Assembly: GCF_000002075.1 (NCBI RefSeq)
Contig: NW_004797997.1
Location: forward strand, 193,388 to 257,258
DNA from: Aplysia californica
Lineage: Eukaryota
Direction of reading: 5' to 3'
Length of the DNA stretch: 63,871 bases
Shown: positions 30,299 to 62,878 of the stretch, piece after piece
How positions within the stretch are numbered: the stretch's first letter is position 1
Layout of the letters: every line of letters starts with the position of its first letter
Notes under the pieces: model-generated
The model's database searches: none
Told to the model about the DNA's origin: nothing
What the model saw: the letters and a program-made list of their open reading frames with translations, nothing else
Made by a program: the position numbers and the translations under genes

Positions 30299-30376
30299 CA
30301 GTGTAGGGGACGACAGGACGTCTTGTAGTCGTGGTGGTTGTTGTGGTTGTTGTGGGTCGGGTAGTTGGTGGTGGTG
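30299..30376 (-). CDS. Thr-rich linker exon (APPPTTRPTTTTTTTTTTRRPVVPYT) ending at a GC donor
   Basis: 78 nt, phase 1 to 1, tttcag acceptor, donor G|GCAAGT. Confidence 0.8.
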
Positions 30377-30698: not shown

Positions 30699-30914
30699 CT
30701 CTATTCATTCTGTACAGATATATTCCTGGAACTTCTCCCATCTCCTCTGGGCTGTTGATGATGGTTCTGAATGCGTCAGTAGGTTTGGAGCTGATCTCAT
30801 CTATGTCAGTGGTATCTCTAAAGTTTAGGCCGATAGTGTACACATCAGTGCCAAGATCCTTCAGTCTGTTTGCAGCGCCATAACTACGTTCAGAGTTCAA
30901 ATATTTCTCATTTC
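30699..30914 (-). CDS. VWA-f exon 3 (GNEKYLNSERSYGAANRLKDLGTDVYTIG...YLYRMNR)
   Basis: 216 nt, phase 1 to 1. Confidence 0.88.
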
Positions 30915-31282
30915 CTGAAAGACAAACAAAGACACAGCAATACATCATTAATAACATTAAATGTGTATTTCAAAGAGAATGCTTCCTTTCTTGTATCCAG
31001 TCCTTTAATAGAATAAAATGCTGGCCTTCTGTGGAGGTCTGTAAGTGAATCTCAGACAAAACAATAATAATGAGCTGAAGAAAATGTTTCCTTCCTCTCA
31101 TGAAAAGACAGGAAATTTGAACACCTAAAACACGTAGGATCTAAATAAAATAGCAAGAGCACAGGAGACGTTTTGTCACTCAGCATAAAGGCAGTTCCTA
31201 CAAAACCAAGTGCTCATATAGTATTTCTGTTTGTCCTTTTTTAAGCCAGTGATTACAACATGTCTGTCCTGGAGAATTTAAA

Positions 31283-31818
31283 GGGGGCTCTCGTGGCCTA
31301 GAGGTTAAGGTGTTCGCCTCTCGATCAAAGGTCCCGGGTTCGAATCCGGGTAGCGATGGACAAATTTTCTTCAGTAAAATGTTCTCCTTTCACATCTATT
31401 CCTGCTCTCTCACAATGTCCTGTCATTGCTTTCGTGTGCACTTTCTTACGCAGCTTTCTCACCTCCTTTGCCCCCTCCTATAGGCCCCTGACTCTTTCTG
31501 TAGCCTTTCTACTGCTATTCCTTGGCTCCTCCTTACTGTTGTCTTTCAGCCACATCCCTGTTCTTAGTTAAGAAAGATCTACACCTAGCCTTCTCGGACA
31601 GGAGCGAAAAATATCAGAGGTCCCGTGTGCAAGTTGCGCACGTTAAAGATCCCTTTGAGGTCCTAAATCGACAAGAGTAGGCTTAGGCCGAAACTCGGGC
31701 AAAATTAAAAATTTCCTTCCAACTGAAAATGTTAAATGTGTTTCGTACATTCGTTTGACCTTATGCAGTCGTGAGCACTGTAAAACACTAACGAAAAAAT
31801 ACAAAAGAAAAAAAAAAG
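31283..31818 (+). mobile_element. tRNA-derived SINE, family A (Deu/Nin-like central domain), A-rich tail
   Basis: A box TGGCCTAGAGG, B box GGTTCGAATCC, central GAGGTCCCGT..ACGTTAAAGATCCC..AAGAGTAGG. Confidence 0.8.
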
Positions 31819-32127
31819 AATGCGAATCTCAACTGTACTATGCTCCTCTGGAAACCATGAATGTTTCTAAGCGTTCTTCTACTAGATGTTGACATGTTTT
31901 ATTGCACATAGTTATGCGTTATATACAATGCTTTTTATAATTTATTATTACCTTATTTATTATTAACTCAACAAAAGCATAAAAAATAACATTTACACGG
32001 TACGTAATTCAAAATAACGAAGCAACTCAAGATATTTCATATACATTTGTAGATCATGTTTAGTTTATGCCTTTTAGCAATAAACGTGTTTTGTGTCCGA
32101 AAACTGCCTACTCTATTGTTCAATAAG

Positions 32128-32338
32128 ACATATTATCTGTATGAAGAACAACATAGTTTCAATATGACATGCCTGTACGAAGAACAGCATAGTTTAATTG
32201 TGACATACCTGTAAGAAGAACGACATACTTTCAATATGACATACCTGTAAGAAGAACGACATAGTTTCATTGTGACATACCTGTAAGAAAAACGACATAC
32301 TTTCAATATGACATACCTGTAAGAAGAACGACATAGTT
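32128..32338. repeat. About 6 x 36-bp tandem repeat overlapping the VWA-f exon-2 donor
   Basis: Units start at about 32128, 32167, 32203, 32239, 32275 and 32311 (acatacctgtaagaagaacgacata..). Confidence 0.9.
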
Positions 32339-32483
32339 CCTAGCCCGAGGCCTGTCTCCCTGTCGTGAAGTGAACATGGAACGTCTCACGTAATCGAAGG
32401 CACCACCGACATCGGGCCTACGGGTGCTGGGGGAGTTCCCCATTTTGCCAATGCCAGCAATGATCTCATCCTTGAAGTTGTAT
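32317..32483 (-). CDS. VWA-f exon 2 (RYNFKDEIIAGIGKMGNSPSTRRPDVGGAFDYVRRSMFTSRQGDRPRARNYVVLLT)
   Basis: 167 nt, phase 2 to 1, donor GTATGT. Confidence 0.88.
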
Positions 32484-33427
32484 CTGTGAAAACGGAGAAC
32501 TCACGAATAAGTTCATGCGCTAATACTAGGTAACTAGCAACTCCGTCTTTCACAAACACACACACAAACACAGAAGAAGCTTTATAACCTTTTTTATCCT
32601 CCGCACAGTTAAGATTTACCATCTCTCAAAAGGCATCAGATATACTACTTCTGCAGGTTAGAGCTCCAACAATACACTTTTATGTGCAAACATGTTTAAA
32701 GTATTAATAGTCAAAGCAAGCGGTTTTGTATGTAGAAGCGAAGTGAATTCTATACTCTGCAATATGCAGACATTCAGTCTCCCAAAGACGGGTTACCTGC
32801 TTTGTAAACGAGTAAAGTGAAGATCATATTGAGAACGTAGCAAAAGCACACACAAAGTAACGTAAATTAATCNNNNNNNNNNNNNNNNNNNNNNNNNNNN
32901 NNNNNNNNNNNNNNNNNNNNNNNNNNNNNNNNNNNNNNNNNNNNNNNNNNNNNNNNNNNNNNNNNNNNNNNNNNNNNNNNNNNNNNNNNNNNNNNNNNNN
33001 NNNNNNNNNNNNNNNNNNNNNNNNNNNNNNNNNNNNAAGTAACACGAAGTTAAGTAAATAAAGCCAGGCAAAGTAAAGTAAAGTAAAATGGTTTTGGAAC
33101 CCCTTACGATAATGCTAAATTATTTGACAGGCGTGACCTCCGAATATAAACACAAATCCGAAAGGACTGAGCCAAATGAGTTAGGAGCCTTGAAACCTCC
33201 GCAAAACGATCAGTCCAAGGTCACCCAACATGGTATTCAAACCAGGGCCATCTGCTCTGCTGTCCAACATAATACCAACAGAGCTAACAGAGGGCAGTCT
33301 CGTCTCCCTATTGGTATCAATATCAAGTGCCAGATCTGTCTTTATGTCTGGTCAAGTGTTCTAGAAACTACTATTTTTTAATTTGTTGTCTTTTCCTGAT
33401 TCTTTTTCCAAAAGTTATACCACCAAC

Positions 33428-33611
33428 CTGTTGAGTTGGAAACTTGGGCGAGATCTGGAATCAAAAGTCATGCTACCAACACGCCAGTCTCCTGTGTCAA
33501 TGTCAATTTGTTCAGTGAAGTCTGTCACAAAAGTCTTCATCCAGTCGAATGTCTCGTCATTGACAGATGAGTCCAGCATGAAAATGATATCAGTGCCAGT
33601 CTCTTTGAACT
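33428..33611 (-). CDS. VWA-f exon 1 (QFKETGTDIIFMLDSSVNDETF...FQLNR), degenerate MIDAS
   Basis: 184 nt, phase 1 to 2. Confidence 0.9.
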
Positions 33612-34038: not shown

Positions 34039-34137
34039 GAGGAATTCTCCTTGGTGTCGTGGTTCTACGGGTCGTGGTTGTAGTTCTGCGTGTGGTTGTC
34101 GGCCTGCGAGTGGTCGTGGTGGTGGTGGTTGTTGTGG
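34039..34137 (-). CDS. Thr/Arg-rich mucin-like exon (ATTTTTTTTTRRPTTTRRTTTTTRRTTTPRRIP)
   Basis: 99 nt, phase 1 to 1, mixed Thr codons (not a simple repeat), donor GTGAGA. Confidence 0.85.
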
Positions 34138-37100
34138 CTGAGAACAGAAGACGTTTACAAATTCAGGCACACAACATTTTGGACACTATCGAGGACAAAA
34201 CACGTTCTTGTCCTTTACAGAGTTGACGTGTATAATAGAAATGTAAAACTTCAAAATGATACACGGTTGTACAGTTCTACAGAAGATTCAAAAGCAACCA
34301 ATATACTAAGATAACCAGTTATAAAAGGAACACATTTGTCATTCATCGGAGATCAGCGACAGCAAAACGCAGAACCGAATTTCGGTATTGAAACACCCAG
34401 ATTTACTTTTTCTACAATGTCAAGATCTTCAGAATATTATTATGTTCTGTACAGGCCTGCAATACCTTCAGCCAGAATCACTCAATACCATAGATTATAA
34501 AGCAAAAGTATAGATTTACTACTCTGTTCTACTCTGCAAAGTGAAAATAATATTGATGATTTACGAGCGCAGATCCTAAGTACCAACCAGAATTGCAAAT
34601 CAAGTTCAAAATAGTTCCGTAGTAGCAAAAATACATTCATGATAGAAACATTTATGCTAAATTTACAAAATCATTACATGTACCACATGCCTTCAAAGAG
34701 TATCGCGAATAGCATTCCTTCAAATACATAGAGACAAAGGAGTGATAAGACGCCAGCCAAGGTTTTTTCATGACAAAAGAAGTTGAAATGTTACCATGAA
34801 CAACTGCTCGAATTTGTAACGATGCCCCCCCCCCCCAACAGACACAAAACCCCAAACAAACAGGTAATTCAATATTTCGCCTTTTAAATCTTGTTCCCCA
34901 TAGAATATATAAATAAATAAATAAATAACTAGTATGTATGTATGTATTACCTCTTAATTTGCCTGTCCCAGACTAACACAACACCAAACAGGGAATTCAA
35001 TATTTCGCCTTTTGGAACTTCCCCATATTATTATTACCTAATATCTTTGTATGCCCTCTTCCTTTGCCTATCTCAGACTCTGCTGTCAGACATCTCAGCT
35101 GTATCTACTGTCTCCTTCAGTCATTCAGACTGTTTTCTTTACTCTGACCTTCATTTATCTTCACTAAATACACCCTCAAGTATCTTTCTTATCTTAAAAA
35201 ATATTACAGTATTTAAAAAAAAGACTGACAGATGAACTTCCCTGTCAACAAGTCGAATGCATCAAGTATTGTTTTTATTGCTCATGACGGGTAAAAATAA
35301 AAGGAACTATTATTCTTATCATTAGATAAGAATGTGCAGATAATCAACATGCCAAAATTCATTGGTGCAGGGCTCCATAAATACGTCATAGACATGTATT
35401 TTTATACGTACCCTTCATACTTAAGTATGTATGTCCGTGTGCATGTGTGAGTAGGTGTGTGTGTGTGTGTGTGAGTGTTTATACTCATATTAATGTATAC
35501 ACGTATATTCCATTGGGCCTGTATATTATTTATCTGTGCATGTGTATGTGTGTGTATAGTTGAGTGTGAGTGTGTATACTTATATTCTTTCCGGTCTGTA
35601 TATTATTTACGTATGCATGTGTATGTGTGTGCGTGTTTGTGTGTGAGTGTGAGTGTGTGAGTGTGTGTGTTTGTCTNNNNNNNNNNNNNNNNNNNNNNNN
35701 NNNNNNNNNNNNNNNNNNNNNNNNNNNNNNNNNNNNNNNNNNNNNNNNNNNNNNNNNNNNNNNNNNNNNNNNNNNNNNNNNNNNNNNNNNNNNNNNNNNN
35801 NNNNNAAACATCGTCCAAATGTGGATTTTAAGTCAGTGTTTCTAAATCATCCGGCAAACACAACTTGTGTATTATGTTTAACAAGATTAAATTACTGTGG
35901 AAAAAATTCATTCGTTCATTCAATCATTCATTCATTCATTCATATATTCATTCATTCATATATACTTTCATTCAGTTACTCATTCACTTATTCATTCATT
36001 CATTCATTATTTAAAAGTGACATAATGTAGCAGTTTTCATGCAACAAAAGTGTTAAAAATGAAAACAGTAAACAAAAAAATATTCTTTTAGGAAAACACT
36101 GGTGAATTGTCTCCTAGCCTACGACTTTAAAAGCATTCAAATGGTGAATAGGGTAAAGCAACAAAGTTGAGATGTCTTTATATATTTTTTAAAAAAATAG
36201 AAAGAAACATTCCCTGGGGATAAGTATATTATTATGTGCAAATAATAAATAAGAAAACAAAAGTTGAAGCATTATAAAAGTTAAATGAAGAAATAATAAT
36301 ATGTGAAAACAAAGCCCCTATCACAAACAAAATCNNNNNNNNNNNNNNNNNNNNNNNNNNNNNNNNNNNNNNNNNNNNNNNNNNNNNNNNNNNNNNNNNN
36401 NNNNNNNNNNNNNNNNNNNNNNNNNNNNNNNNNNNNNNNNNNNNNNNNNNNNNNNNNNNNNNNNNNNNNNNNNNNNNNNNNNNNNNNNNNNNNNNNNNNN
36501 NNNNNNNNNNNNNNNNNNNNNNNNNNNNNNNNNNNNNNNNNNNNNNNNNNNNNNNNNNNNNNNNNNNNNNNNNNNNNNNNNNNNNNNNNNNNNNNNNNNN
36601 NNNNNCAAATAACAAAAAACCAAACCAAACCAAACCAACCCAAAACAAAACAAAAACAAATACATTTACTCCCCAAATCATAAAAAGGGCTATTTGTTAA
36701 CTAATAATATAATGATAAAACCAGTATCTGCGTGTGTTGTGGTAAAGCAGGTTAACATGAACAAATAAAACATAATGTGAGAAGTGTGTCTGAACAATTC
36801 CTGAGTGCAAAATGGCATAAATAAAAAGGTGCTTCATTAATAAAAATAAACGGGCATAGTCCTTCTTGCAGTTAGCTGTGAAATCAAATTACCATGTCAT
36901 TTGTGGGGATCAATCAGAAAGCATTGTAAACATGAATAAAGTGTTTTGTAAAGTCATCATAAGCACATTTTTCTTCAACTTGATGTGCCTACGGTCATGC
37001 ATAATTGTTTCGTCAGTTGACAGAAAAGCAGAGTAATGATTTGTGACCTTTGGCAAGCCCCTAGAACCAGGGGAACGTTGCCGACATTACTGCAAAGTCA

Positions 37101-37249
37101 TGAACATTAAACGTGGGGGCATAATAACGTTATTATTGTGGTGTGGTATGCAGAACTGTAAAAAGCGCAGTGGGTGGTAGACTATAGCTACAAGCTGGAG
37201 GCAAATATTCTGGGATCAAAGGAAGGCTGGGGGAGGGAAGGGGGGTAAC

Positions 37250-37435
37250 CTCTTGTTGTAGTTCTTCTCGTCGATGGTCTTGTAGGTCTTGGTGTTGTTG
37301 CTGGTTTTGGGGTCGTCGTTGTCGTCGTTGCTGTTGTTGGCCGGGTTGTTGTCGTCGTGGTTGTTGTTGTTGTTGTTGTTTGTGGTGGTCGGGGTGGTGT
37401 TGTAGGAGCAGGGGTAGGGATAGGGGTCGTTGTCT
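37250..37435 (-). CDS. Thr/Pro mucin-like exon (TTTPIPTPAPTTPPRPPQT12RPTTATTTTTTPKPATTPRPTRPSTRRTTTR)
   Basis: 186 nt, phase 1 to 1, open frame, TAG acceptor, weak donor GTTACC. Confidence 0.8.
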
Positions 37436-39179
37436 CTAATAGTTTTCCGTAGTGAAAAATGGTTGCAAGTATGAGTTATCATTGCATATTACGGTGGGTG
37501 AAAGAAACATACAAACAAACTAACAGGCAGTACACAATCAAAGAATCATTTTCAATAACACCAAGAATCGTAAACGAAATGCATTCTTCGCCGTACCTCT
37601 AAAACCTGCGACTTTAACTTATGTTGTCAATAGGGGAACCTACCTTTATAGAAGAACTTAAACTCTGGCAAATTATGCTTTTCTTTTCCACGGGATTTCT
37701 ATGTGTGTTTATAGTACACTGGGAGGTTACAGAAATAGCATTTTCCTTCATCCTCTGTGTGCTTTGTTTTCTGTCCACATCTCTGACAACAGACGGGCTC
37801 TACAAACCCCATTATGAGGGAGAAGCTTTCCTCTGATCCATTTCAACAGTACAACTATGAATTTGTCCAGCTCATGCTGGTTCCAACCACTACAACACAA
37901 AATCAGTACATCAAAATATATTGATAGAGGTCGCAAAGATGTTGTCGATATAATCTTTTAAAAGCCCGTGACACATCTTTTACTTGAAAAAAGGAGAGGG
38001 GGCGGGGAGGGGGGGGGGAGAGTACAATTTCTAAAGGAACTAATCTTTCAGCATTAATTTTGAGGATGCAACTGTAAGACTTTCAAGCGTCTGTTACAGT
38101 TGAGGATTGGGACACGTCTAGTCTATGAAACAAATTTTAATGAGAACTGCAAAATCTTTCCCATTATATTAAAAGAAAGAAATGTCAGAAAGCATATGAA
38201 AAGAATCAAGTAAAATAAGAGAAGAAGAAGAATATATCAAATGCAAAATCACCCCTTATTAATAAAAGCCGTTCACACTGACAATAATAACAGTACACAA
38301 TTTGAAACGGATGACATTTCTCGTTGCAGATAAATATGTATTTGATGGGTAACTTCATAAAAACAGAAATGGTGACAATCTGTGTAATATGTAAACTTGT
38401 CATTGTTTTTCAGTGCATCTTTGAGAGTCCAAAAGAAAAGCACTTTATTTGAATTTTGCCTGAGATGGTAAGTATCAAAATGACTCATATCAGTCTACAA
38501 ACTTCCATCTCCTACAGAAATTAACCAACAATAAATGTAGAACAAATGTGAGGCAGCGTGGTGGAATCAGGCTCTCGTCTAGAGTGACAATCAATGTAAA
38601 AAAGACATGAAACCTGATGGCACCTAAAAGTTATACATATATAAATAATTGTCACGTCTTCGTGTATACTGAATCAATAGCTTAAAAAAGAAAAGTGAAA
38701 AAAAAAAAGAAAAAAAAGAAGAAAATCATAAAAAGCACGTGGTTGAATTGCAGGGTTGATGACCTAAAATAAGAGTATGAAGCTGTGACGTATAAGTTAT
38801 TTAAAAAATGAAAGGAACTGCAAAGTATGGAGAGTACTGAAACAAAAAAATGTGGTGTCAAAATAAAAGCATGCACACGTTGTGAATCCTTGTCTGGCTT
38901 TTCAGCTGTGCTGTGGAAGCATTAAGTGGTGTTGTTTAACGTTAGAGGTTGGCGAGTTGTGTCAGTTGTCCTGTCATTCTGTGCATAGGGAGCGGCGTGT
39001 GAGGGGGGGGGNNNNNNNNNNNNNNNNNNNNNNNNNNNNNNNNNNNNNNNNNNNNNNNNNNNNNNNNNNNNNNNNNNNNNNNNNNNNNNNNNNNNNNNNN
39101 NNNNNNNNNNNGCTCCTCCTTGGTCAGGAAGTCCAGGTTCACGTCTGTTGTTGCCTGCACAGATACAAAAGAAACCAAT

Positions 39180-39555
39180 GTTTTGTTTTAGTAAGGTTAT
39201 ACGGAGCTCGCAACTGCATAAGATCATAGGAGCGTCAAGGGGTGGATGTCAACAGAGAAGTCCTCACAGGGAATCAGACTTGCTCCGCTCACCTCTCTAG
39301 CCTCAGCAGCACAAAGACCGCTTCGACTATCAAGGCACCCCGGAAATAGTGGGTCAAAAGGGCGTGACAAACACACAAAAGAAGTAGAGGAAAATGACGA
39401 TAGCGAGGATTAGGAAAGAAAAAGCAGCAGTTCCCTGTTGTAGTTCAGGCACAATTATGAGCATGACAATGTTAATTCAGCCCATTTACAATTCTACTGT
39501 GCACTAGAACGAGAAATGTCCTCCCTTTGGGAATGGCCTAAAGACACTTCAGTCA
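39180..39555 (-). mobile_element. Second copy of the unclassified 375-bp repeat
   Basis: Matches 21146-21522. Absent from the paralogous segment near 44560. Confidence 0.75.
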
Positions 39556-40540
39556 GTGGCACCGCCGGGGGGGTGATTCACACATGGCTTACTTATCTGC
39601 GACTAGATGTTTAAACAAAGTCAGAGGGGAGAATAAGGTGCATATTATATCAACAAGTTAAGTTGCTTATTTGTTACTGCTGTCATTTGTCAACACTCCG
39701 TATAAGCAATTAAGGGAGGTAGGATAGCATAGCCTATCTAATAAAAGTTAAAAACAAGAACTGTTCACTGAATATCTCAAGGGAATATTATGTTAGTGCA
39801 GTGATTTGCCAAACACCCGATGTAAAGACTAACAGATGGTGAGTCCTCGGCATTAGGAGGTTTCAACTCTAAGAAACACAACTTTCAAAATGAGTGTATT
39901 CATTTTTGTAGTAAAAGATATCTATTCATTTGAATGGCTCGCTCATATGACCATTATGAAGCCGCAAATGCAGTAAAACTCTTACTTAATTCATTTGAAT
40001 GAAGAACCAAAACAGACAGGTAGTTGCAGGGCCTATACATGTATAATATGTTTATAGGCCTATAAAATAGCGGCGAAATAGAAAAAAGTACCTGCATCTA
40101 CTTATGACCCCTTTGTTCCATTCAACCACAACCGAATAAGCAGGTGTCTCCAAAACACCGCATTTAAACAACAAGCCACCATAATCATAATATTATTTTA
40201 CTTTCTGCATTGCTATCAGGTATAATTTCCAGACTGTTTAAGTGATGGTTAAACTGGGGAGTAGGTTATTCACCAGAATCATTTCTGTGTTTGAGTAGTG
40301 CTTGATAAGACCAAATTTACTACTTCAAAGGTGAAAAGCAGGGTTGAAGTTTTACAAAGATTAAGACATCATGAATCGTGTTTCTCAGCACCAGAGGTCT
40401 GTAATAATTGTCACGTGTGATGATCCAAGAAATGAATTATATACGGGGAGATATTTTCTTCAGAAAACTTCAAACAGAAAGCACAGTGTATTGTGTCAAA
40501 AAGCAAAGCAAGTGTTTCAACAGTAGCAACAATGTTTAAC

Positions 40541-40600
40541 TTTTGCGTGTTGTTGCCACGGGCAACGTAGTTGTTTTCACAGGAGCAGACGAGGTGGTAT
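40541..40600 (-). CDS. 60-nt linker mini-exon (TTSSAPVKTTTLPVATTRK)
   Basis: Phase 1 to 1, tttatag acceptor, donor GTTAAA. Paralogous to 40967 and 45311. Confidence 0.65.
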
Positions 40601-40966
40601 CTATAAATGATGATATTGAAGAAATAATTGTTGGGAGCTACACGATCGGATGGAAATTATATACGCGAAGATAATGTTATAATCACATCTCGTACTATTG
40701 CGTTTTAAAAATCCACATTTATAATTTTTTAAAAAGATATACAAAATGGTTTTATCATGCAGTTGCGAGCGCCTTAAGACTCTTACAAAACTAAACAGTT
40801 AGGATCATTTTATGCTATTGAGTGGAAGTTGTGCCGTATTATAATAAACTTTTACTTTCTTTATTTTGCAGAAACCTTTACAAAGAGAGGAAAAAAACGA
40901 AGGCACTGCGTGTTGTGTCACAAAAGCAAAGCAGGTGTTTCAAAAGTAGCAATAATTTTTGTTAAC

Positions 40967-41026
40967 CTTCACGTGTTGGTTCCGCTGGCAACGTTGTTGT
41001 TTTCACAGGAGCAGGTCTGGTGGTAT
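40967..41026 (-). CDS. 60-nt linker mini-exon (DTTRPAPVKTTTLPAEPTRE)
   Basis: Phase 1 to 1, donor GTTAAC. Confidence 0.68.
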
Positions 41027-42456
41027 CTATAAATAATAATATTTCAGAAATAACTGTTGGGGAGCTATATGTCCAAACGTACACATGTTTTTCCTTTCGG
41101 CTAATTAACATTTTCATATTTTTATTTTTAACTGAAAGGTTCTTTGCAGCTCTTGAGAAGTAGGCTACCCATTGCTGAAGTGACAAACATAGAATGCTCT
41201 TCAGCACCTTTGAAAGTACTCTTTTAAAATGTATCATACTCCAGCTTATATTATCATAAATATGCAGAACGACATTTACAATTGTTTACCATATAAAGCT
41301 TCACAGTTGTACCAAAAAAATGAAATGGCTCCCACCTATTCTGCTAACAAGGCCTTATAAACTACAGAAGCGTTTTGGCAATCATACCATTAACAACAAG
41401 TATATATATAAACTCTTTTCTCTTTACAATTACCACGTTTTTCTGTCTTAGGAATGTGGCACATTTCTGCATTGTTTAGTAAAAGAAAATAACATTTTGA
41501 CAAACATTTTATGTTGAAACATTAAAACCCACTCCTGTCAGCAAGTACGGTATGTCTGGGTTAAAATCTAAAAGAGCATGCTTTATTAAGAGATCTGACG
41601 TTGTCCTCCCATTGCCACCATTATAACAGAATTTACTTCTTGCGGGAAAATCAATATTTTTTTCTTTTGTATTCACAATACCTAATGTGGCACGTCAAGG
41701 ACACTTTGATGACTAGAATGGTTGTGAATTATTTTAAGTTTAAGAAATATTCAAATGTCCAATTATGTTATTATCCCTGTGGCCTTTTCCATTACACGCT
41801 TTTTTGGCGCCACATTTGTAGGTTACGTAAAAATGTATTGACATGGTGCAAATTGTTATGTTTTCTAGAAAAACGAAACAAGAAAAACGGNNNNNNNNNN
41901 NNNNNNNNNNNNNNNNNNNNNNNNNNNNNNNNNNNNNNNNNNNNNNNNNNNNNNNNNNNNNNNNNNNNNNNNNNNNNNNNNNNNNNNNNNNNNNNNNNNN
42001 NNNNNNNNNNNNNNNNNNNNNNNNNNGGTGATCATGATGATGATTATTTATGGTGACGATGATGATGCTCTGATTTTGGAAATAATGTGCACATTAGTCT
42101 TAGTGTTAAGTGTGTTTCATTTTTGGTTTGTTTGGCGCTTTCTCTAGATCCCCGCCCTGCTCTCCAGGGGGGCAGAACACAACCCTCCTTCCCAACTCCT
42201 CACAAAGAGTGACAAAACATTTGGAAATAATTCTTCATCCCTAGCATTTAATAAATTATGCCGAAAAATCACAATGGGGGCCGCTTCTAAGTGATGATAT
42301 TGCTCGTGTGCTTGTTACCCTATGTCTATGCTATCATAATTTTCAAAACAGTGAAAGGAGTGTAGCAATTAACCTTAGTAATATTTATTTGCATTACAAG
42401 CTAGAATATTACCTATCGCGTTTTTACCGTCAGTGGAGATCGTGGAAACATTGTTA

Positions 42457-42692
42457 CCTTAGAATTACAAAGTTCTATCTGACATTTTTTACCGTTCTGA
42501 GTTACGACCATGATGTCAGAAACCAAATTGTTCTATCCGCTCTATCAAAATCGTAAGAGTATTCAGAGTCGTCATCAGGATGTTCAAGGAATTACATTAG
42601 AAAAAAGATTGACATATTGTGAAACTCAAAATTTTTAACTTCAAATTTCTCCAAACTGGTTACTTAGCAGATAAAACTTTGTAATTCTAGGG
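42457..42692. mobile_element. 236-bp MITE with ~25-bp TIRs and TA target duplication (Tc1/mariner-type)
   Basis: TA|ccttagaattacaaagttctatctg ... cagataaaactttgtaattctaggg|TA. Confidence 0.75.
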
Positions 42693-42827
42693 TAGCGACA
42701 TGTCAAAATTAAACATTTATTTTCTGTCCTTGTAAGTCCTGGTCATAGAAGCAGTTGCAGTTACTGGTCTTGTGGGGGTAAATTCTGAGAGACAAGTTAA
42801 AAAGAAGAGTAAGGCATGTTTAACAAC

Positions 42828-42893
42828 CTTCGGGCACTGGCTTCTCGGCCTCTGTAGTAACGACAACTTTTGCAGGCGCAGGTGGTGTAGTTC
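42828..42893 (-). CDS. 66-nt linker mini-exon (GTTPPAPAKVVVTTEAEKPVPE)
   Basis: Phase 1 to 1, tctttag acceptor, donor GTTGTT. Paralogous to 46362. Confidence 0.62.
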
Positions 42894-45310
42894 CTAAAGA
42901 CAGAGTTTTTATATTTCCAATATTGTATATGAACATAAAGAAGGTAAACATTAAAAAAATATATGACTGTGACACCTGCAATGATTACTATTCTCTAACC
43001 AAGTAACCAAGTAAGCAACCAAGTCTAACTCAGCAAAAGAGTAGAGGATGATTACATCTTTCTAAAACATTTGTGGGGACTGGAATTCTGGAAAACATTT
43101 ACTTATATAGTTTGAATAGATTACCTGGCTGTAACTATTAACAGTATTTTACAGTATTCCATACTACTGTTAAAAGAAATGCCCTGAACCCAGTAGAAAA
43201 AAAGAAAGAAAAAATCTATTGGTCAAAGTACTTTCTAAGAATATGACGGCCAGGATATTATATTTTCTACTTTCTTAAATTAAATATTCAAAGGAGGTTT
43301 CCATTGTGGGCTTAAGCTAAGACAAAAATTATGTTTCCCACTTACATTAGGAGGATCAAACAAACATTAGAAATCCTTTCACTAGTTTACGATCCAAAAT
43401 TACTAAGTAATTGCAATACTGATGTGTTAATTGAAAAACCTGACCACAATGTGTTTAACGTTACACTGATAATCTGAATGTATGGTGATTCAGCAATTCA
43501 TTCAACATTTGAACACACTTAGTCTTGTTTCTTTTCCTCAATGATAAACAACAATTTGTGAAAGATACAGATAGGTGCGGGGGGAGATTGTGACATACAG
43601 AGCTCCTCATAGATGGCCACAANNNNNNNNNNNNNNNNNNNNNNNNNNNNNNNNNNNNNNNNNNNNNNNNNNNNNNNNNNNNNNNNNNNNNNNNNNNNNN
43701 NNNNNNNNNNNNNNNNNNNNNNNNNNNNNNNNNNNNNNNNNNNNNNNNNNNNNNNNNNNNNNNNNNNNNNNNNNNNNNNNNNNNNNNNNNNNNNNNNNNN
43801 NNNNNNNNNNNNNNNNNNNNNNNNNNNNNNNNNNNNNNNNNNNNNNNNNNNNNNNNNNNNNNCACTGCATTATCATGACTGCCGAGCTATAGTGACTGAT
43901 ATAAAAAAGACAAAATTATAATGTTGTTGGCCCTAGGAGGTTGAAAAAGCTTTGGATGCCAAGGACCTTTAAAACACAAATTACTTCAATTCAATGACGT
44001 TCTCATTCTTCCACTTCCCTAAAACTGCAACACGTACAAAGCATACACAAAAGTCATATAAACATGTAATTGAATCAAATCGTAAAAGGCATATTGGTCG
44101 AATAGCTGGTTTGATGTCTTAAAAACAACAATTATTATGAAGCTGCAACTGATAGCTGCTAAAATAAAATGAAAGGAGCTGCAACGTGTGGACAGTACTG
44201 AAATAACAAAATGTTCCCCCCCAACACCCCCCCCNNNNNNNNNNNNNNNNNNNNNNNNNNNNNNNNNNNNNNNNNNNNNNNNNNNNNNNNNNNNNNNNNN
44301 NNNNNNNNNNNNNNNNNNNNNNNNNNNNNNNNNNNNNNNNNNNNNNNNNNNNNNNNNNNNNNNNNNNNNNNCGAACAACCCACAAACCCAAAAGCAACAA
44401 GAAAAAAATCTCAACGCGTGCACAAATTTTATATCCTGGTGTAGCTTTTCAGCTGTGCTGTAGAAGCATTAAGTGGTGCTGTTCAACGTTATAGGTTGAC
44501 GAGGAGTGTCAGTTGTCCTGTCATTCTGTGCAGAGGGAGTGGCGTGTGGAGGGATTAGGAAATAGTTTACTTATCCAGTAATAAAGGTTTAAATCAGACA
44601 AAGTCAGTGCCGAGGATCAGGTGCATATTGTTATGTCAGAAAATGAGTTCTAAAAGTTGCTCTATATCTTAAAATTCAGGAGTAGTAATTTGTTACTGTT
44701 GTGATATGGTCAACACTCTTTGTAAGCACTAAAGGGAAGTAAGATAGCATATCTAATGAATGTTTGTGGTTTACTGTACACACCAGAAAGATTTGTTAGT
44801 GCAGTGATTTGTCAAATGTAAAAACTAACAGATAGTTAATCCTCAACATTAGAAGGTCCCAACTCAAAGAAACCCTTTCAAAATAAGTGTAATGGCCTTC
44901 TTATCTTTATATGAGAAGCAACCTAACTATTCATTTGAACAAACGACTGTAGAAGATAGCCAGGTTTATAATATAATAAGTAATAGCTGTTGATTGATTG
45001 ATTGAGTAGGTGTTTTACGGCACTATCGACTCAAGTAATAGCTGTGAAATAGCAAAAGTACCGGCATGCACTCATGAACTCTTTGTTTTATTCACCCAAA
45101 GATAAAAAAGCATGTGTCTCCAAAAATTGCTTTAAGACAACAATAGTAATAACAAAAATAATAATTCTTTTTTTCTGCATTACTATCAGCAATGGAGGTC
45201 TGCAAATGTCACTAAGTGAATTATGTACGGGATGATATTTTCTTCAAACAAAAAGCAGAGTGTTTGTATTACAAAGCGAAGCGAGTGTTTCAATATTAAT
45301 AACGTTTAAC

Positions 45311-45370
45311 CTTTACGTGTTGTTGCCACTGGCAACATAGTTGTTTTCACAGGAGCAAATGTTGTGGTAT
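45311..45370 (-). CDS. 60-nt linker mini-exon (DTTTFAPVKTTMLPVATTRK)
   Basis: Phase 1 to 1, donor GTTAAA. Confidence 0.65.
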
Positions 45371-46361
45371 CTATAAATAACGTACATGGAATTGAAGAAA
45401 TAACTATAGGGAACTGCCCATTCAAATTTACAATAGTTTTTAAACACCAATCAACATTTCTATCTTCTTGTTTTTAACTGAAATATATTACGATTACAGC
45501 TTACTAAAAGTAGGCTACCCATTTACTATCACAGCCCTTGAAAAGTTGTCTACCCATTGATGGAGTAGCATACATAGAATGTTTGTCGGTACATTCGAAA
45601 GTACTCTTTTTAAATATTATATCGTGCTGCAGTTAAGATCATAATAAGTATCTAAAGACATTTACCCCTGTTTACCATATTATATTACACAGGAGAACCA
45701 ATAACATGAAATGTCGTTCTCCTTTTTTACTGGCAAGGCCTCATACACTTTATCATTTTTGCCATTATAATACGAGATACAAAAAATAAACTCTTTTCTT
45801 GTTACGATTACCAAACTTTCCTGTCTTACGAATGTGGCCCATTTCAGCATTTAAAAAAAATTTGCAAGAACACTTTGACACATATAGTTATGCTGAAAAT
45901 GTGAAAACTTAGCTCTGGCTGCAAGTAGTTATATCATCATATTTTATTATCTGCCACAGCATGCTCCTCAGAGAAACATAACTGCCAACATTTAATAGAA
46001 TTTACTTCTTCTTGCAGAAAGGTCAATCGTTTCATTTCAAATCCACAATACGATACTGGGCTCATGAAAAGAACAGTCAGGGAAACTATGTTGACCAGAG
46101 AAGTAGAAAAATATTCCAGGAAATATTCAAATGTCCAACAATATATCATTGTCACTGTATTTTGTTTTTAATTACTTCGCAGACTAGAGTATCTATAGCG
46201 GTAATACCGTCAGTGGAGATTATTGACAGCCTACCTATCAAGTAGAAAGTTTATCATTTGTTCGTTATAAGTTCTGCTTAAAGGAGCATTAACAATCACT
46301 GGTCTTGTTGGGGTAAATTCTGCGAGACAAGTTAAAAAGCAGAGTAAGTAATTTTTAACAC

Positions 46362-46427
46362 CTTCGGGCACTGTCTTCTTGGCCTCTGTAGTAACGACAA
46401 TTTCTTCAGGGGCAGGTGGTGTAGTTC
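46362..46427 (-). CDS. 66-nt linker mini-exon (GTTPPAPEEIVVTTEAKKTVPE)
   Basis: Phase 1 to 1, donor GTGTTA. Confidence 0.62.
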
Positions 46428-46961
46428 CTAAAGACATAACACATATTCTAATTTTGTCTTTGAACATTAACACAAGTTCAAAACAATTACACTTTTACAA
46501 ACAATATGGTTCCTGCATCACATCTACAACAAAAGTATGGAAGGCTTCCAGTCCCTCAGTCTGACTCAGCAAATGAGTAGAAAATCAATACAAATTTCAT
46601 AAATATTTGTCTGGCCAATAAATCTGGAATGTGATTATTTGAATTATTATTGTTTGAACGAATCTGGATACAACCATTGAAACTCCTTTACAGTAGATAT
46701 GTTCTGTGTAACAATGTTACCAGTAATAACCTGCAAGCAGCAAAAAGAGAAAAAATCCACCGAACAATAAAAGTACTTTCTAAAAGAATGATAAACAGAG
46801 TTCTCTACTTTCTTGAATCTCAAATTCAGAATAGGATATTATTCTAAGCTTTATCAAATAAAGTGCTTGAGAGTTAATCTTTTTTCCAGTCACATTAGTA
46901 GAATTAAACGAAAACTACAAATTGTTTACAGGGACATGGGCACAGCAAAAAAAATGGGAGA

Positions 46962-46964
<3 letters not shown>

Positions 46965-47039
<75 letters not shown>

Positions 47040-47040
47040 A
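46965..47040. repeat. (AG)n microsatellite
   Basis: Direct observation. Confidence 0.95.
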
Positions 47041-47305
47041 GACGGGGGGGGGGAGGACGTGTATATACTTGACGTTGCAAATTGCATATTATTATTATTT
47101 TTTGTTTTAACAAACACGATAGAAGAAAAGAAATTACCTGACAAAAGCAAGACTAATTATGTACGTCATAAATTATAAATGTTATGTGAAAAAAAGATGA
47201 TCTTTCAAATTCCTTTGGTCATTGGAGTGTCGGTTGAGGCTGCAAGTGCTACTTGTAAGTTGTGTACAAAGCAAAGTTAGTGCGAACAGAGCAAAATAAA
47301 AAAAC

Positions 47306-47365
47306 CTTCAGACGTTGTTCCCACAGGAATCGCAGAAGTTTCCTTCGCTGCAGTGGTGGTAGGAC
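47306..47365 (-). CDS. 60-nt linker mini-exon (SPTTTAAKETSAIPVGTTSE)
   Basis: Phase 1 to 1, TAG acceptor, weak donor GTTTTT. Confidence 0.5.
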
Positions 47366-48805
47366 CTATAACCATTTCAGATGGCAATTTTTATCGACGG
47401 GCAAGGAAGACATTGTATTTAAAGGAAACACAGACAAAGCAGTCCCACAGATGGTTCCAGGAACTTCAGAGGCTCCAATATTGATAAAATGGAATCTATG
47501 AAACCAACATTAATCACATTGAACATATAAATACTGATTTACCGTACAGACAAAACTACACAAGACGCAAAAGTAACGACATTAGACTGTAAAAGGAGCA
47601 GACAAAGTAATGAATGACATCATATTATTATTTAGTACAACCATGATTTTAAGAAGAGGCAAAAGTCAAATACTGACTAGTAAGTAAATGATTAAGCCAA
47701 ATTTCACAGTTTGCGAAAAAAAGGCCTTTAAAGAGGTTTCAGGAGTCTATCGAAATACCAGAAGAGAACATATTCAGCTTTATCCTGGTACAAATGTACA
47801 TGGCGGATCAATAAAAGTACAAAAGCAAATAGCTCCCAAGCATTTTCAAATGATTACACTCCTGTTATGCGATTCTCCTTAAAATATAATATGTCAATAA
47901 AAACAGTTGAATAGTAATTGTAAATTAAACATCAAACAATCCTCACAAAACTGTNNNNNNNNNNNNNNNNNNNNNNNNNNNNNNNNNNNNNNNNNNNNNN
48001 NNNNNNNNNNNNNNNNNNNNNNNNNNNNNNNNNNNNNNNNNNNNNNNNNNNNNNNNNNNNNNNNNNNNNNNNNNNNNNNNNNNNNNNNNNNNNNNNNNNN
48101 NNNNNNNNNNNNNNNNNNNNNNNNNNNNNNNNNNNNNNNNNNNNNNNNNNNNNNNNNNNNNNNNNNNNNNNNNNNNNNNNCACAGACGGCACTAGAAATC
48201 AATTAATTAAGCCAATGAAAAATATTCATTTATCAAACATAATATAGGAGCTTAAATGAATGAAGGAGAATAGGCCCACATCAAAATTGCAAAATGTCGT
48301 ATTTTTACAAGGACTCTACAAGTAGATCAGTTACGTCATACATTATTTTTAACAAACTGCAAGGCAGCGTATAACTGGAAATGAAATATAGATCAAAACT
48401 ATCACAACGTTTTCTGGGATCAAACATGTTTGTCACATCTTTGTCTAAAACTTTAAAAAATAATAATGTTATGTGACAATTCAAATCAGCCTCAATTATC
48501 CGCTAAAAAAATTGGTACAACCTGAGGAAGAATGCAGCAAGCAAAAGCAGATAGAAATGGCACTGGAAGCCAATCTGTAAAAAATGAAAGACTACAACTC
48601 ATTGTGAACAACAATAGAGCCCGAATCAGTGCCTATGATTCAGGAACCAGACAATTCCCTTGAGTTCTGTACTGCGAGGTCTTTTTGAAAAATTTCAATG
48701 AACTTTAATATTATTTGATACAAAGGACATGCCACAGGTTTTTATTTAAAAAAATATTCATTGAACACAAAAATAGGTCATATAACATAAAAAGGATGTA
48801 CTTAC

Positions 48806-48832
48806 TTTTGGGGGTAGGCATCGTGAATTCCT
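48806..48832 (-). CDS. 27-nt micro-exon (KEFTMPTPK)
   Basis: ttttcag acceptor, GTAAGT donor, phase 1 to 1. Confidence 0.75.
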
Positions 48833-49010
48833 CTGAAAATAAAACAAAAATGGCAACTTTAAAAGAACTGTATTTTCAATTTAAAGTATCTCTAAGCTGA
48901 CAAACAAGAGTCATAGTCATAACTTTCAAAATGCCTGAGAAGTAAACGTTTTGGTATAAAGCTCCACACCATAACAAAAACAAAGAGTAATTCAAAGAGT
49001 ATTCCCATTT

Positions 49011-49452
49011 GTGAGGCAGCGCGGTGGAATCAGGCTCTCGTCAATTTTTGGGCATTTAGAGTTGTTGGTATCTTCTTAAAGCTTGTTCATTTGTCTTTAT
49101 TTGGATATTTGGATGAAAAAAGTATTCATTTATCTTGAATACAAGTCGAGATATTTGTGAATGAAGGAGGTGGGGGTCACCTGTTTTCAGAGGTAAAATT
49201 AGTGAGAAAATGGCCTTCAAAGATTAGTTATTTCCTTAGCTTAACAGTCCATGGTAACTGAAAATTTACATTTTTAAAACTTTAATCTATGTTTTTATGA
49301 AAAATCCACACAGAAATGTGTTCGTTAATGGGCATGAAAGGTGTTGAGTCAAAAAGCAAAAATTTGATAAAAATTCACAAGCATGCGGAAAAATGTAGGT
49401 TTCTTCTCTTTGATTATTTTGACGAGAGCCTGATTCCACTGCGCTGCCTCAC
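49011..49452. mobile_element. 442-bp MITE with 34-bp TIRs and 4-bp ATTT target duplication (Sola1-like)
   Basis: ATTT|gtgaggcagcgcggtggaatcaggctctcgtcaa ... ttgacgagagcctgattccactgcgctgcctcac|ATTT. Confidence 0.85.
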
Positions 49453-49618
49453 ATTTGTAAAGCTGTAAGTAGCTTACGTAAAAAAAAAGAGTGAAAACTT
49501 CAAACGACTGTTATAGCCTACATTAAATTAACAGAAGTTGAACCAACAGAAGACGAAGTCAGTCGATCATGACTGTTAAAACTAAGATTGGATACGTTTT
49601 TTTAAGAAAAGCCCTTAC

Positions 49619-49834
49619 TAGGACAGGCTGATGCGTAGATGAGGTCATCCACAGTCTGCAGCTCATCAAAATTTGCGACCTTGAAGCTGTTGTCCCTGGC
49701 TGGTGGGGATGCAATGCCGTCCAGCTCCCTCGTGTCGGTCAAGCCAACGCCAATGGTGTAGATATGAATGCCTTCATCCTGAGCCATCAGGGCCTCGGGG
49801 ACTGTGTTGCGAGCGTCAATAGTAGACACACCAT
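49619..49834 (-). CDS. VWA-e exon 3 (DGVSTIDARNTVPEA...IYASACP)
   Basis: 216 nt, phase 1 to 1. Confidence 0.92.
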
Positions 49835-50109
49835 CTGGGGAAAAAGAAATGTGAATCAATTAATTAGCTATCTACCTGATCATGGCGAAACTTGGACTTT
49901 CTTGTGTAATCTATGGTCTCGGCTTCCCAAAGGCATTGGAAGACTACAAAGACAATTGAAAAAAGATAAAACAGTTCTGTTCGGCATACGAAGAACGAAG
50001 AGCATAAAATAGTTAGCATTAATTACCATAAGTAAAAATAGAGCATAAAAATCTGCATTAACTGCCATAAGAAGAAAGTGTAGTATAAAAACTAGTTTGC
50101 GTTAATTAC

Positions 50110-50383
50110 CAGTAAGGACGACAACAATGTTGGGGATGGTAGCCCGGTCTCCATTCACTGGGGTGAACATCTCTGTCCTCATGGCACGCAGGGCTCCGGC
50201 GGTGTTGGTGCTTCCAAATCGGAAAGGAATTCTGTCCACAGCCCTGAGGACATCTCTCTTTGTCTTGTACTGATTCAGCTGGAAGATCTGGAAGACCTCA
50301 GTGCTGTATAGTAAGACACCTACTCTCACATTTCCAGAGTCGATATCAGCCTTGCTCAGGAAATCCTTCACAAACAATCGTAC
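50110..50383 (-). CDS. VWA-e exon 2 (VRLFVKDFLSKADIDSGNVRVG...NIVVVLT)
   Basis: 274 nt, phase 0 to 1. Confidence 0.92.
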
Positions 50384-50781
50384 CTGTGAAATTAATTATC
50401 GAGTTTCATTACCCATTTCTCAAAAAAGCTTGCAGAAATCGAGATCTGTGGGCAGTAATAGTGACAAAAGCTTTAAAAAGTAACACTTCATTTTCGAATA
50501 CTTCGTTTAAACTCTTCAACAATTATTGCGAGTAATGCCATAACGATTGAGTAGAGCATGCCCAAACTGTACACTGTAACCACTAGCTTAATTAATTCAC
50601 ATCCTTGCATTTAGAGCATCAGATCACCTGTTTTGTATCACTGTTTGTGAAATAATCGTTAGCCTTTCAGCATTACATGCTAATTACAAGTACAATAGAT
50701 TTTCTCACTATAATCTCTTAAGTTAGAAAACTCTGTAATCATAACACAAACAGAAAAGCCACGCTGTACAGAAAGACAAAC

Positions 50782-50858
50782 CTTCCTGAAATTCTGCTCA
50801 GTGACGCTGGTGGAACTGTCAATGACCACGATAAGATCAGCCCTGCCCAGAGCACAAT
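50782..50858 (-). CDS. VWA-e exon 1 (DCALGRADLIVVIDSSTSVTEQNFRK)
   Basis: 77 nt, phase 1 to 0, MIDAS DSSTS. Confidence 0.9.
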
Positions 50859-54023: not shown

Positions 54024-54590
54024 CTCCACAGAGGGCAGCAAACACATTGTGTCTCAGATCTCTCAGCTCAGAAAACTCCTGTACGGCAAATCTGTTCTCA
54101 TCAAGTGGTCTGCTAGCAATTCCATCCAACTCCCGTGTGTCTGTCAGGCCAATACCAATGGCATAGATGTGGATGTTGTCTGCACGAGCTTGTTCTGCTT
54201 CAGGAATGGTTCTTCTAGCATTGATGTTTGACACACCGTCTGTTACCACAATGGCAATGTTGTCTACGTTGGGACGGTCTCCATTGGCTCTTGTAAACAT
54301 TTCAGCTCTCATGGTTTTGAGGGCATCTGCAGTGTTGGTGCTGCCATATCGGTATGGGATATCATCAATGGCATTGTAAACATCAGCCTTAGTATTGTAG
54401 GTGTTCATTTGGAACTCAACATGATCTGCTGTACTGTAAATGATCACACCCACTCTAACATTGCCACCATCGATGTCAGCTTCATACAGGAAATCTTTTA
54501 TGAAGTCTTTCATCAGTTCAAAGTTGGGCTCAGTCACACTGGTGGAAGAGTCCAGGACAAACACCAAGTCAATCTTGGCTCCAGCACAAC
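54024..54590 (-). CDS. VWA-d: complete single-exon VWA domain (CAGAKIDLVFVLDSSTS...FAALCG)
   Basis: 567 nt (189 codons), phase 1 to 1, intact MIDAS, flanking Cys pair. Confidence 0.95.
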
Positions 54591-54946
54591 CTGTTGGCAA
54601 AGAATGAGATCCATGAGCACTCACTCAATATGAGCAAAGAGTAAGTGTAAAAAGACAAATATCTTTAAAAGTACAACAATTTGGTTTGCATCAATGCATT
54701 AAACTGTAAATTGTGGGACGGAGTTACAGGTTTTTCGTTTCTGCCTGTTTTTTCTTCTGAAACTGCAGAAACCACGGGCCTTACCAGGGGGCACAATTTA
54801 TACGTTTTGTCCAGTGTGACCTTTAGGCATATCAGCCCCCATGCAGCCTTCTATGACCTAATGGATTTCAACTTCACCTAATATTACATAATGACCATCT
54901 GCCTGTCGCTAGTAAAATGACACAAGCCTCCTGAGGCATCAAGACG

Positions 54947-55026
54947 TCTTCTAGCATTAATGTTTGACAAACCGTTTGTTACCACAATAGCAATGTTGTC
55001 TACATTAAGACAGTCTCTACTGACTC
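54947..55026 (-). pseudogene. Degenerate intronic fragment of the VWA repeat exon
   Basis: tcttctagcattaatgtttgacaaaccgtttgttaccacaatagcaatgttgtctac... aligns without gaps to 54211-54290. No splice sites. Confidence 0.75.
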
Positions 55027-55833: not shown

Positions 55834-55860
55834 TGGCTTTTGTGGGTGCTGGTGTAGAAG
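55834..55860 (-). CDS. 27-nt linker micro-exon (ASTPAPTKA)
   Basis: ttttcag acceptor, GTAAGT donor, phase 1 to 1. Paralogous to 62852. Confidence 0.85.
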
Positions 55861-56254
55861 CTGAAAAAAAGAAACAAAAGGTTACTAAGACTTATGAACA
55901 AACGAAACAAACTTAAAATCCTAATAACACGCTTGTCTTTATCAAAATAAAATAACAAGACAAGTAGATAACTAGCTGAAATTGAAAAGAACGGACCTTT
56001 GCCTTTGAGGCATGTGCTCTGCCCCCTACCCCCAAGCAAAGATCGTATACTGTTAGGTTTACAAGTAAAAGCAGCACACTGGCATGAGTGCTCTAACGTC
56101 CACCGAGTCCAGTAACATAACACAGTGTTTGAATGAGAAATTCCTATTTAACAAAATATAGTCACTTTAAATGTCAAGAAATAATCTTATCTTATTCATT
56201 ATTCAAATAAAAATATGTAATTAAATTCCAGCAGCAAGATAACTGCATGTTTAC

Positions 56255-62851: not shown

Positions 62852-62878
62852 TGACTTTTGTCGGGGCTGGTGTGGAAA
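62852..62878 (-). CDS. 27-nt linker micro-exon (VSTPAPTKV)
   Basis: CAG acceptor, GTAAGT donor, phase 1 to 1. Confidence 0.85.

What the first reader, a model, noticed from the sequence alone, without database searches (positions are those of the whole stretch)
34039..48832. Array of symmetric phase-1 Thr/Pro mini-exons with weak donors: a candidate splice-tunable molecular spacer
Seen: nine exons (27, 60, 66, 60, 66, 60, 60, 186, 99 nt) lie between VWA-e and VWA-f. All are multiples of 3, phase 1 to 1, and end in A, G or C, so any subset splices in frame with no junction stop. The seven inner exons have poor donors (GTTTTT, GTGTTA, GTTAAA, GTTGTT, GTTAAC, GTTAAA, GTTACC). The 48806 exon and the 62852/58934/55834 linkers use GTAAGT. 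Inference: combinatorial skipping (64 combinations from the six 60-66-nt exons alone) could set the length and O-glycan load of the stalk, and so the mesh size or mechanics of a secreted gel. Most of these exons are invisible to the ORF track.
Basis: partly seen in the sequence, partly recalled or inferred. Interest (0 to 1): 0.82.

Follow-up and report, generated by a model that had tools for sequence, protein, structure and literature searches.

The report
Skippable spacer exons, sea-hare matrix protein
A giant secreted matrix protein of a sea hare has an extendable threonine/proline-rich spacer built from small, optional, in-frame exons, the same trick known from the stalks of CD44 and CADM1, here placed between two binding domains at a position that other molluscs fill with quite different spacer modules.

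Summary
The nine exons are in the sequence (minus strand; exon 6 is 41026-40967): all 3n, phase 1-1, open, T/P-rich, well above chance. The seven inner ones have weak donors (0/7 with +5G against 29/33 elsewhere in the gene) and weak acceptors. RNA contigs show VWA-e>E1 splicing in three studies and E1>E2>E3 in one (depth 149 against 408 upstream); E4 is minor there; two other runs lack E2-E4. So they are real and alternatively used, but E2+E3 travel together and free 64-way combinatorics is not shown; E5-E8 were not covered. E2-E7 arose by local tandem duplication and are absent from Elysia, whose gap-free interval holds only E1 and E9. The gene is a pan-mollusc secreted VWA/EGF protein (annotated 'collagen VI-like', no triple helix). 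Pomacea isoforms differ in the same stalk; scallop and mussel isoforms skip similar linkers; the same slot holds PKD or Ig repeats in other bivalves. 'Gel mesh tuning' is untested; the probable Pomacea orthologue was found in connective tissue. The scan had noted the whole protein on this same window. Verdict: CD44/CADM1-type variable stalk in a new setting.

The parts
49619..50858 (-). VWA-e, three exons (50858-50782, 50383-50110, 49834-49619); upstream anchor of the stalk
   Evidence: Pfam VWA; boundaries; exon 3 in RNA contigs of three runs
48806..48832 (-). E1, 27 nt, conserved first stalk exon, strong sites
   Evidence: junction 49619>48832 in X11, X13, X7; 27-nt counterpart in Elysia, 24 nt Plakobranchus, 33 nt Batillaria
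47306..47365 (-). E2, 60-nt cassette, diverged member of the 60-nt family, donor GTTTTT
   Evidence: both junctions in X11, depth 149; 35/60 ungapped identity to E4, E6, E7
46362..46427 (-). E3, 66-nt cassette
   Evidence: E2>E3 junction in X11; 60/66 identical to E5, no indel
45311..45370 (-). E4, 60-nt cassette, minor in the sample seen
   Evidence: only in a depth-5.3 contig whose match stops exactly at the acceptor with 30 other letters beyond, and which retains the downstream intron (arithmetic)
42828..42893 (-). E5, 66-nt cassette, paralogue of E3
   Evidence: sequence; use only inferred from contig ends; outside the stretch laid
40967..41026 (-). E6, 60-nt candidate cassette
   Evidence: sequence and indel-free paralogy; no RNA test
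40541..40600 (-). E7, 60-nt candidate cassette
   Evidence: sequence and indel-free paralogy; no RNA test
37250..37435 (-). E8, 186-nt Thr/Pro-rich candidate cassette (34 S/T, 14 P in 62 aa)
   Evidence: no RNA test; a 210-nt Thr-rich symmetric exon lies in the Biomphalaria interval
34039..34137 (-). E9, 99-nt conserved last stalk exon (Thr/Arg-rich)
   Evidence: 99-nt counterpart in Elysia (L012 45018-45116); similar peptide in Pomacea and Arion
38723..46927 (.). Local tandem duplication: copy A about 46927-44077 (E3, E4), copy B about 43379-38723 (E5, E6, E7, with E6/E7 a second internal duplication); introns 67-86% alike
   Evidence: no other genomic copies found
30699..33611 (-). VWA-f, three exons; downstream anchor
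   Evidence: single-copy in the genome
6899..63871 (-). 3' part of the host gene: tandem near-identical VWA units, VWA-e, stalk, VWA-f to -k with four EGF; stop near 6899; gene continues upstream on G000:C727 to at least 331 kb

Best explanation
E1 and E9 are old, strongly defined exons giving a minimal 42-residue Thr/Pro linker between VWA-e and VWA-f of a very large secreted VWA/EGF matrix protein. In the sea-hare lineage the intron between them gained seven weakly defined symmetric exons, six by tandem duplication of a 60-nt and a 66-nt exon. They are included or skipped, singly or in blocks, without changing frame, giving a limited set of isoforms with a linker of 42 up to at most 228 residues. 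The linker is probably O-glycosylated and extended and so sets the distance and flexibility between the long N-terminal VWA array and the C-terminal VWA/EGF part. Shown: exon anatomy, weak sites, splicing of E1-E3, low use of E4, duplication history, orthologue variation. Inferred: use of E5-E8, the skip routes, glycosylation, any effect on matrix properties.
For: GT-AG junctions 49619>48832, 48806>47365, 47306>46427 in RNA contigs; the depth-408 contig ends exactly at the last base of E1 and the E2-E3 contig has depth 149; X13 and X7 cover E1 but not E2-E4 (arithmetic). Paralogous exons 80-91% identical with no indel and no stop, flanks 57-80% with 2-7 gaps per 100 nt; changes mostly non-synonymous, so length and frame rather than sequence are kept. 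Weak donors and acceptors confined to the inner seven. Pomacea RefSeq X10 and X11 differ only by 14 aa in this stalk and a transcript contig of the same cluster gives a third upstream context. Mizuhopecten X12-X17 each lack one 18-26 aa T/P linker; Sinanodonta isoforms differ by a 54-aa Thr-rich linker. Orthologues have a signal peptide and no membrane segment.
Against: RNA evidence is assembled contigs, whose depth is not an inclusion level; the only raw-read run does not express the gene. The distal partners of the skipping junctions were not displayed. X13 and X7 have low depth (4-7), and a filter can drop records. E5-E8 untested. RefSeq isoforms in repetitive genes can be mapping artefacts. 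No purifying signal at amino-acid level, so neutral tolerance is not excluded. Tissue of the runs is unknown.
Confidence: 0.72

Rival explanations
1. Neutral splicing noise in a permissive linker: the duplicated exons are tolerated because any in-frame disordered insertion is harmless; inclusion is leaky and unregulated and stalk length has no function.
For: Amino-acid changes among paralogues look near-neutral; E4 is minor with downstream intron retention and E3 also shows retention; Elysia lives with E1+E9 alone and Octopus and Mytilus with 5-11 residues.
Against: No indel or stop in six exons whose flanks have many indels; E2+E3 reach about a third of upstream depth in one sample; several mollusc lineages independently lengthen this slot. 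This rival is compatible with the exons being real and differs only on function.
Confidence: 0.3
2. Fully independent combinatorial skipping (64 or 128 forms) that tunes mesh size of a secreted mucus gel.
For: Every subset is in frame without a junction stop; VWA/EGF proteins occur in gastropod glues (title cited in PMC7333891).
Against: E2 and E3 lie on one unbranched contig; few routes seen; probable Pomacea orthologue found in ampulla connective tissue; no mucus evidence for this gene found.
Confidence: 0.1
3. E5-E8 (some or all) are dead pseudo-exons left by duplication; only E1-E3 and E9 are used.
For: No direct RNA cover was obtained for them; E7 has the weakest donor (0.3 bits).
Against: They keep length, frame and both splice dinucleotides; E2, with an equally poor donor (1.5 bits), is spliced; the intron-retaining contig after E3 starts where a competing path beginning with G then not T would branch, which fits E5 (inference).
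Confidence: 0.15
4. The array is an assembly artefact (two haplotypes placed in tandem) or exonised transposon pieces.
For: Several gaps in the interval; a 100% identical false-looking duplication exists elsewhere in the window (14102-15604 = 16460-17962).
Against: Copies A and B are only 67-86% alike in introns; the exons with flanks have no other genomic copies; RNA joins E1-E2-E3 in genomic order across a gap.
Confidence: 0.03

Closest known systems
CADM1 alternative exons 8/9/10 (PMC5385562)
   Same: Run of small, optional, Thr-rich in-frame exons that change the length and O-glycan load of a stalk.
   Different: CADM1 is a membrane Ig protein, the stalk is juxtamembrane and controls ADAM17 shedding; here the protein is secreted, the stalk lies between two VWA domains, and there are seven inner exons made by recent tandem duplication.
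CD44 variant exons in the stem region (PMC9351704)
   Same: Array of optional exons inserted at one point of a glycosylated stem, used singly or in blocks.
   Different: No sequence relationship; CD44 is a membrane hyaluronan receptor whose variant exons add ligand sites; regulation here is unknown. CD46 STP exons and CD45 exons A/B/C are further analogues (from memory, not checked).
[quoted passage not shown] Pomacea XP_025106489.1, Elysia KAK3803424.1, Mizuhopecten LOC110464458, Mya LOC128240703)
   Same: One-to-one domain order VWA-e to VWA-k with four EGF, 51-80% identity to Pomacea per exon; T/P linkers; many annotated isoforms.
   Different: The 60/66-nt exon family was not found in Elysia or Batillaria, nor in the parts of the Biomphalaria and Plakobranchus intervals that were fetched. 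I found no paper on the splicing of this stalk.
Collagen VI alpha chains and matrilins
   Same: Tandem VWA domains; matrilins also alternate VWA and EGF.
   Different: No Gly-X-Y helix in 12 orthologues; no Kunitz or fibronectin III hit in their Pfam lists; far more VWA domains than matrilins.

Membership tests
Variable O-glycosylated stalk exon array (CADM1/CD44 type, functional kind) | Several small symmetric in-frame exons at one point of the protein | tested here: met
Variable O-glycosylated stalk exon array (CADM1/CD44 type, functional kind) | Alternative inclusion in transcripts | tested here: met
   for E2-E4 (contigs; skip partners inferred); E5-E8 not covered
Variable O-glycosylated stalk exon array (CADM1/CD44 type, functional kind) | Ser/Thr/Pro-rich, no folded domain | tested here: met
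   95 S/T in 228 aa; no Pfam hit for E8
Variable O-glycosylated stalk exon array (CADM1/CD44 type, functional kind) | O-glycosylation of the encoded residues | not testable with these tools
   composition only
Variable O-glycosylated stalk exon array (CADM1/CD44 type, functional kind) | Juxtamembrane position in a membrane protein | tested here: not met
   no membrane segment in orthologues; last exon ends just after VWA-k
Variable O-glycosylated stalk exon array (CADM1/CD44 type, functional kind) | Regulated, tissue-specific use | tested here: inconclusive
   three runs differ, tissue not on record
Collagen VI alpha chain | Gly-X-Y triple helix between VWA clusters | tested here: not met
Collagen VI alpha chain | Tandem VWA domains | tested here: met
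Mollusc giant VWA/EGF matrix protein (orthogroup of Pomacea XP_025106489.1) | Collinear VWA-e to VWA-k with four EGF | tested here: met
Mollusc giant VWA/EGF matrix protein (orthogroup of Pomacea XP_025106489.1) | Signal peptide | tested here: inconclusive
   present in Arion, Mya, Sinanodonta, Potamilus, Solemya; first exon of this gene not located
Gel-forming mucin / mucus component | VWD-C8-TIL assemblies and cystine knot | tested here: not met
   window domains are VWA and EGF only; none in orthologue Pfam lists
Gel-forming mucin / mucus component | Presence in secreted mucus | not testable with these tools
   no paper found

The most novel reading that the evidence does not exclude
The VWA-e/VWA-f junction is a selected 'ruler slot' of a pan-mollusc matrix protein: lineages have independently filled it with a mucin-like stalk (gastropods, scallops, unionids), three to five PKD domains (Mya, Ruditapes, Dreissena) or four I-set Ig domains (Solemya), and the sea hare additionally adjusts it by tissue-regulated exon choice, so that splicing sets a spacing of roughly 10 to 50 nm in the matrix.
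Probability: 0.3. Interest if true: 0.65.

Novelty: new variant of a known kind. Interest (0 to 1): 0.42.

Why it matters
Splice-variable glycosylated stalks are well known in vertebrate membrane proteins. Here the device sits inside a secreted matrix protein, was expanded recently by datable tandem duplication, and occupies a slot that other molluscs fill with unrelated spacer modules. That gives a tractable case of how linker length in a matrix protein evolves and is varied, in a model animal with many RNA data sets, and it draws attention to a huge, mis-annotated mollusc matrix protein with no functional study that I could find. The mechanism itself is not new.

Tried and rejected
Pomacea genomic locus not on record, Pecten locus too long, Aplysia's own annotated proteins not returned. 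Physella and Elysia marginata loci did not reach the stalk. Idea that PKD-repeat skipping in Mya occurs in the same slot: rejected, the e-f spacer is constant (283 aa) in 12 isoforms and the skips lie further upstream; likewise constant in Mizuhopecten X11-X18 and Sinanodonta. Idea that the acceptor-like element 42-43 nt after E3 and E5 is a relic 60-nt exon: not supported (18-22/60 identity, no donor). Transposon origin of the exons: no other copies. Paper searches for this gene's splicing found nothing. One local script scored short junction peptides against two already fetched orthologues to place splice sites. The big protein search was used once because the word search cannot see full-length relatives of one exon. 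No gap letters were filled or looked up.
Full report
Setting. The window is G000:C727:193388-257258 of a 927,310,431-base, 4,332-contig assembly; from memory this is Aplysia californica AplCal3.0, and the nearest protein relatives (Plakobranchus 86%, Biomphalaria, Bulinus) fit. It holds the 3' part of one minus-strand gene: tandem near-identical single-exon VWA units, then VWA-e, the stalk, and VWA-f to VWA-k with four EGF modules, ending near 6899. More tandem units and older VWA domains run upstream to at least C727:331 kb.

Observation. All nine exons are present with the lengths, phases and donors stated (coordinates under parts). None touches an N. Eight T/P-rich open AG-3n-GT loci of 45 nt or more lie on the sense strand of the interval, none on the antisense strand, 0.75 in shuffles. 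The inner seven donors average 2.25 bits against 7.0 for the rest of the gene and none has +5G (29 of 33 others do); their acceptors are all TAG with short pyrimidine tracts. The weight matrix was a generic one from memory, so only the within-gene comparison counts.

Origin. E3/E5 (66 nt) and E2/E4/E6/E7 (60 nt) are two paralogous families. A block of about 2.9 kb (46927-44077) is repeated at 43379-38723 with an extra internal copy of the 60-nt exon; introns are 67-86% alike, too far apart for alleles. Exon pairs E3/E5 and E4/E6/E7 are 80-91% identical with no indel or stop, while 100-nt flanks carry 2-7 gaps; differences are mostly non-synonymous. Length and frame are therefore kept, sequence is not. 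There are no other copies in the genome. The weak sites are partly inherited, so they count as about three independent cases (p=0.005).

RNA. Twenty runs hold VWA-e; those with 58% of the words look like spliced RNA. On 44400-49950 the junction 49619>48832 appears in X11, X13 and X7 (three studies). X11 also has 48806>47365 and 47306>46427 on one contig of depth 149, whereas the upstream contig has depth 408 and ends exactly on the last base of E1, which marks a branch. Bin arithmetic leaves no room for intron retention after E1. E4 is covered only by a depth-5.3 contig that stops matching at its acceptor, has 30 further letters from elsewhere, and keeps the downstream intron; a depth-5.5 contig keeps the intron after E3. 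X13 and X7 have no cover on E2-E4. Inferences from letter counts, not displayed junctions: in X13 E1 goes on to an exon not starting with G (E6-E9 or VWA-f); in X7 it goes on for 16 letters starting with G then not T, which fits E3 or E5 (they share exactly their first 16 bases); in X11 the path competing with retention after E3 also starts with G, which fits E5. Contig depth is not an inclusion level and X13/X7 are shallow. The raw-read run X24 does not express the gene. Conclusion: E1-E4 are real, use is alternative, E2+E3 behave as a block; E5-E8 remain untested.

Relatives. Full-length orthologues were reached through. Pomacea XP_025106489.1 matches exon by exon. In Elysia crispata the gap-free 3.6-kb interval has only a 27-nt and a 99-nt exon, the counterparts of E1 and E9; Batillaria has 33 + 42 nt; Biomphalaria has at least 210 + 42 nt symmetric Thr-rich exons. 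So E1 and E9 are old and the 60/66-nt array is lineage-specific among the species sampled. Pomacea RefSeq X10 and X11 differ only by 14 residues in this stalk, and a transcript contig from the same cluster has a third upstream context (species not shown). Mizuhopecten X12-X17 each drop one 18-26-residue T/P linker elsewhere in the protein, and Sinanodonta isoforms a 54-residue one. The e-f slot measures about 5-11 residues in Mytilus and Octopus, 34-48 in Pomacea, 40 in Elysia, 123 in Arion, 85-89 in unionids, 163-167 in scallops, three PKD domains in Mya and Ruditapes, about 470 residues of the same repeats in Dreissena, and four I-set domains in Solemya. In the bivalve isoforms seen, this slot itself does not vary.

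What the protein is. Orthologues have a signal peptide, no membrane segment and no collagen helix; the 'collagen VI-like' label reflects VWA similarity only. A Pomacea protein named isoform X18 (XP_025106551.1) with four EGF between VWA domains, probably the same gene by name, accession range and architecture, was found in the connective-tissue-rich ampulla proteome (PMC8533556). No mucus evidence was found.

Mechanism. Strong E1 and E9 define a default 42-residue linker; weak exon definition lets E2-E8 be added up to 228 residues. With the textbook figure of about 0.25 nm per residue for densely O-glycosylated chains (own knowledge), that spans roughly 10 to at most 57 nm, less in practice since E2-E7 are only 18-45% Ser/Thr. 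The likely effect is on distance, flexibility or protease access between the N-terminal VWA array and the C-terminal VWA/EGF part. This step is inference. Neutral tolerance in a permissive linker is the main rival.

Comparison. It works like CADM1 exons 8-10 (PMC5385562) and the CD44 variable stem (PMC9351704), but is unrelated in sequence, secreted and internal. I found no paper on this stalk. The joined (spliced) protein was not searched; exons were searched one by one.

Verdict. Real, partly validated in RNA, a new variant of a known kind; the 64-form gel-tuning reading overstates the evidence. Interest 0.42.

Noticed in passing
window 30299-30376 (-): The 78-nt Thr/Pro linker exon between VWA-f and VWA-g appears to use a GC donor (CTG|GCAAGT); the Elysia counterpart uses GT.
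   Followed up: partly
window 14102-15604 and 15786-16429 versus 16460-17962 and 18144-18787: 100% identical repeat flanked by gaps, duplicating a VWA exon and an EGF exon; probably an assembly artefact.
   Followed up: no
window 46319 and 42784 (-): A good-looking branch point and CAG acceptor lie 42-43 nt after the donors of E3 and E5. After E3 the retained intron reads in frame to a stop near 46234, and a low-depth contig retains it: a possible minor truncated isoform lacking VWA-f to -k.
   Followed up: partly
window 37249-37187 (-): Read-through of the weak E8 donor gives a further 20 codons and a stop; another possible truncated form.
   Followed up: no
window 32134-32338: 36-nt tandem array that repeats the VWA-f exon 2 donor region.
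   Followed up: no
window 54024-63871 and G000:C727:257000-285700; also L001, L012, L013, L016: Tandem single-exon VWA units 92-98% identical within the species (about 14 here, 17 or more in Elysia and Batillaria), each with its own small T/P linker exon and GTAAGT donor; suggests within-species homogenisation.
   Followed up: partly
P0359 (Arion vulgaris, 2106 aa): Full-length protein with signal peptide goes from two N-terminal VWA straight to VWA-e, lacking the whole tandem VWA block: block skipping or assembly collapse.
   Followed up: no
P0477 and isoforms (Mya arenaria); P0351 (Solemya): PKD repeats (skipped in steps of about 93 aa in Mya isoforms) and Ig domains have been inserted between VWA domains of the orthologue in bivalves.
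   Followed up: partly
L013 39173-43886 (Batillaria): VWA-f is duplicated in tandem, each copy preceded by its own T/P exons.
   Followed up: no
window 19236-19244 (-): RGD tripeptide at the start of the second exon of VWA-i.
   Followed up: no
window 39185-39555 versus 21145-21519; 31282-31792 versus 12307-12809; 49010-49458: Interspersed repeat copies in introns; the 49.0-49.45 kb element is extremely abundant in RNA runs.
   Followed up: no
window 43623-43862: By spacing in the duplicated block, a counterpart of E2 would be expected near or in this gap; unresolved, letters not looked up.
   Followed up: partly
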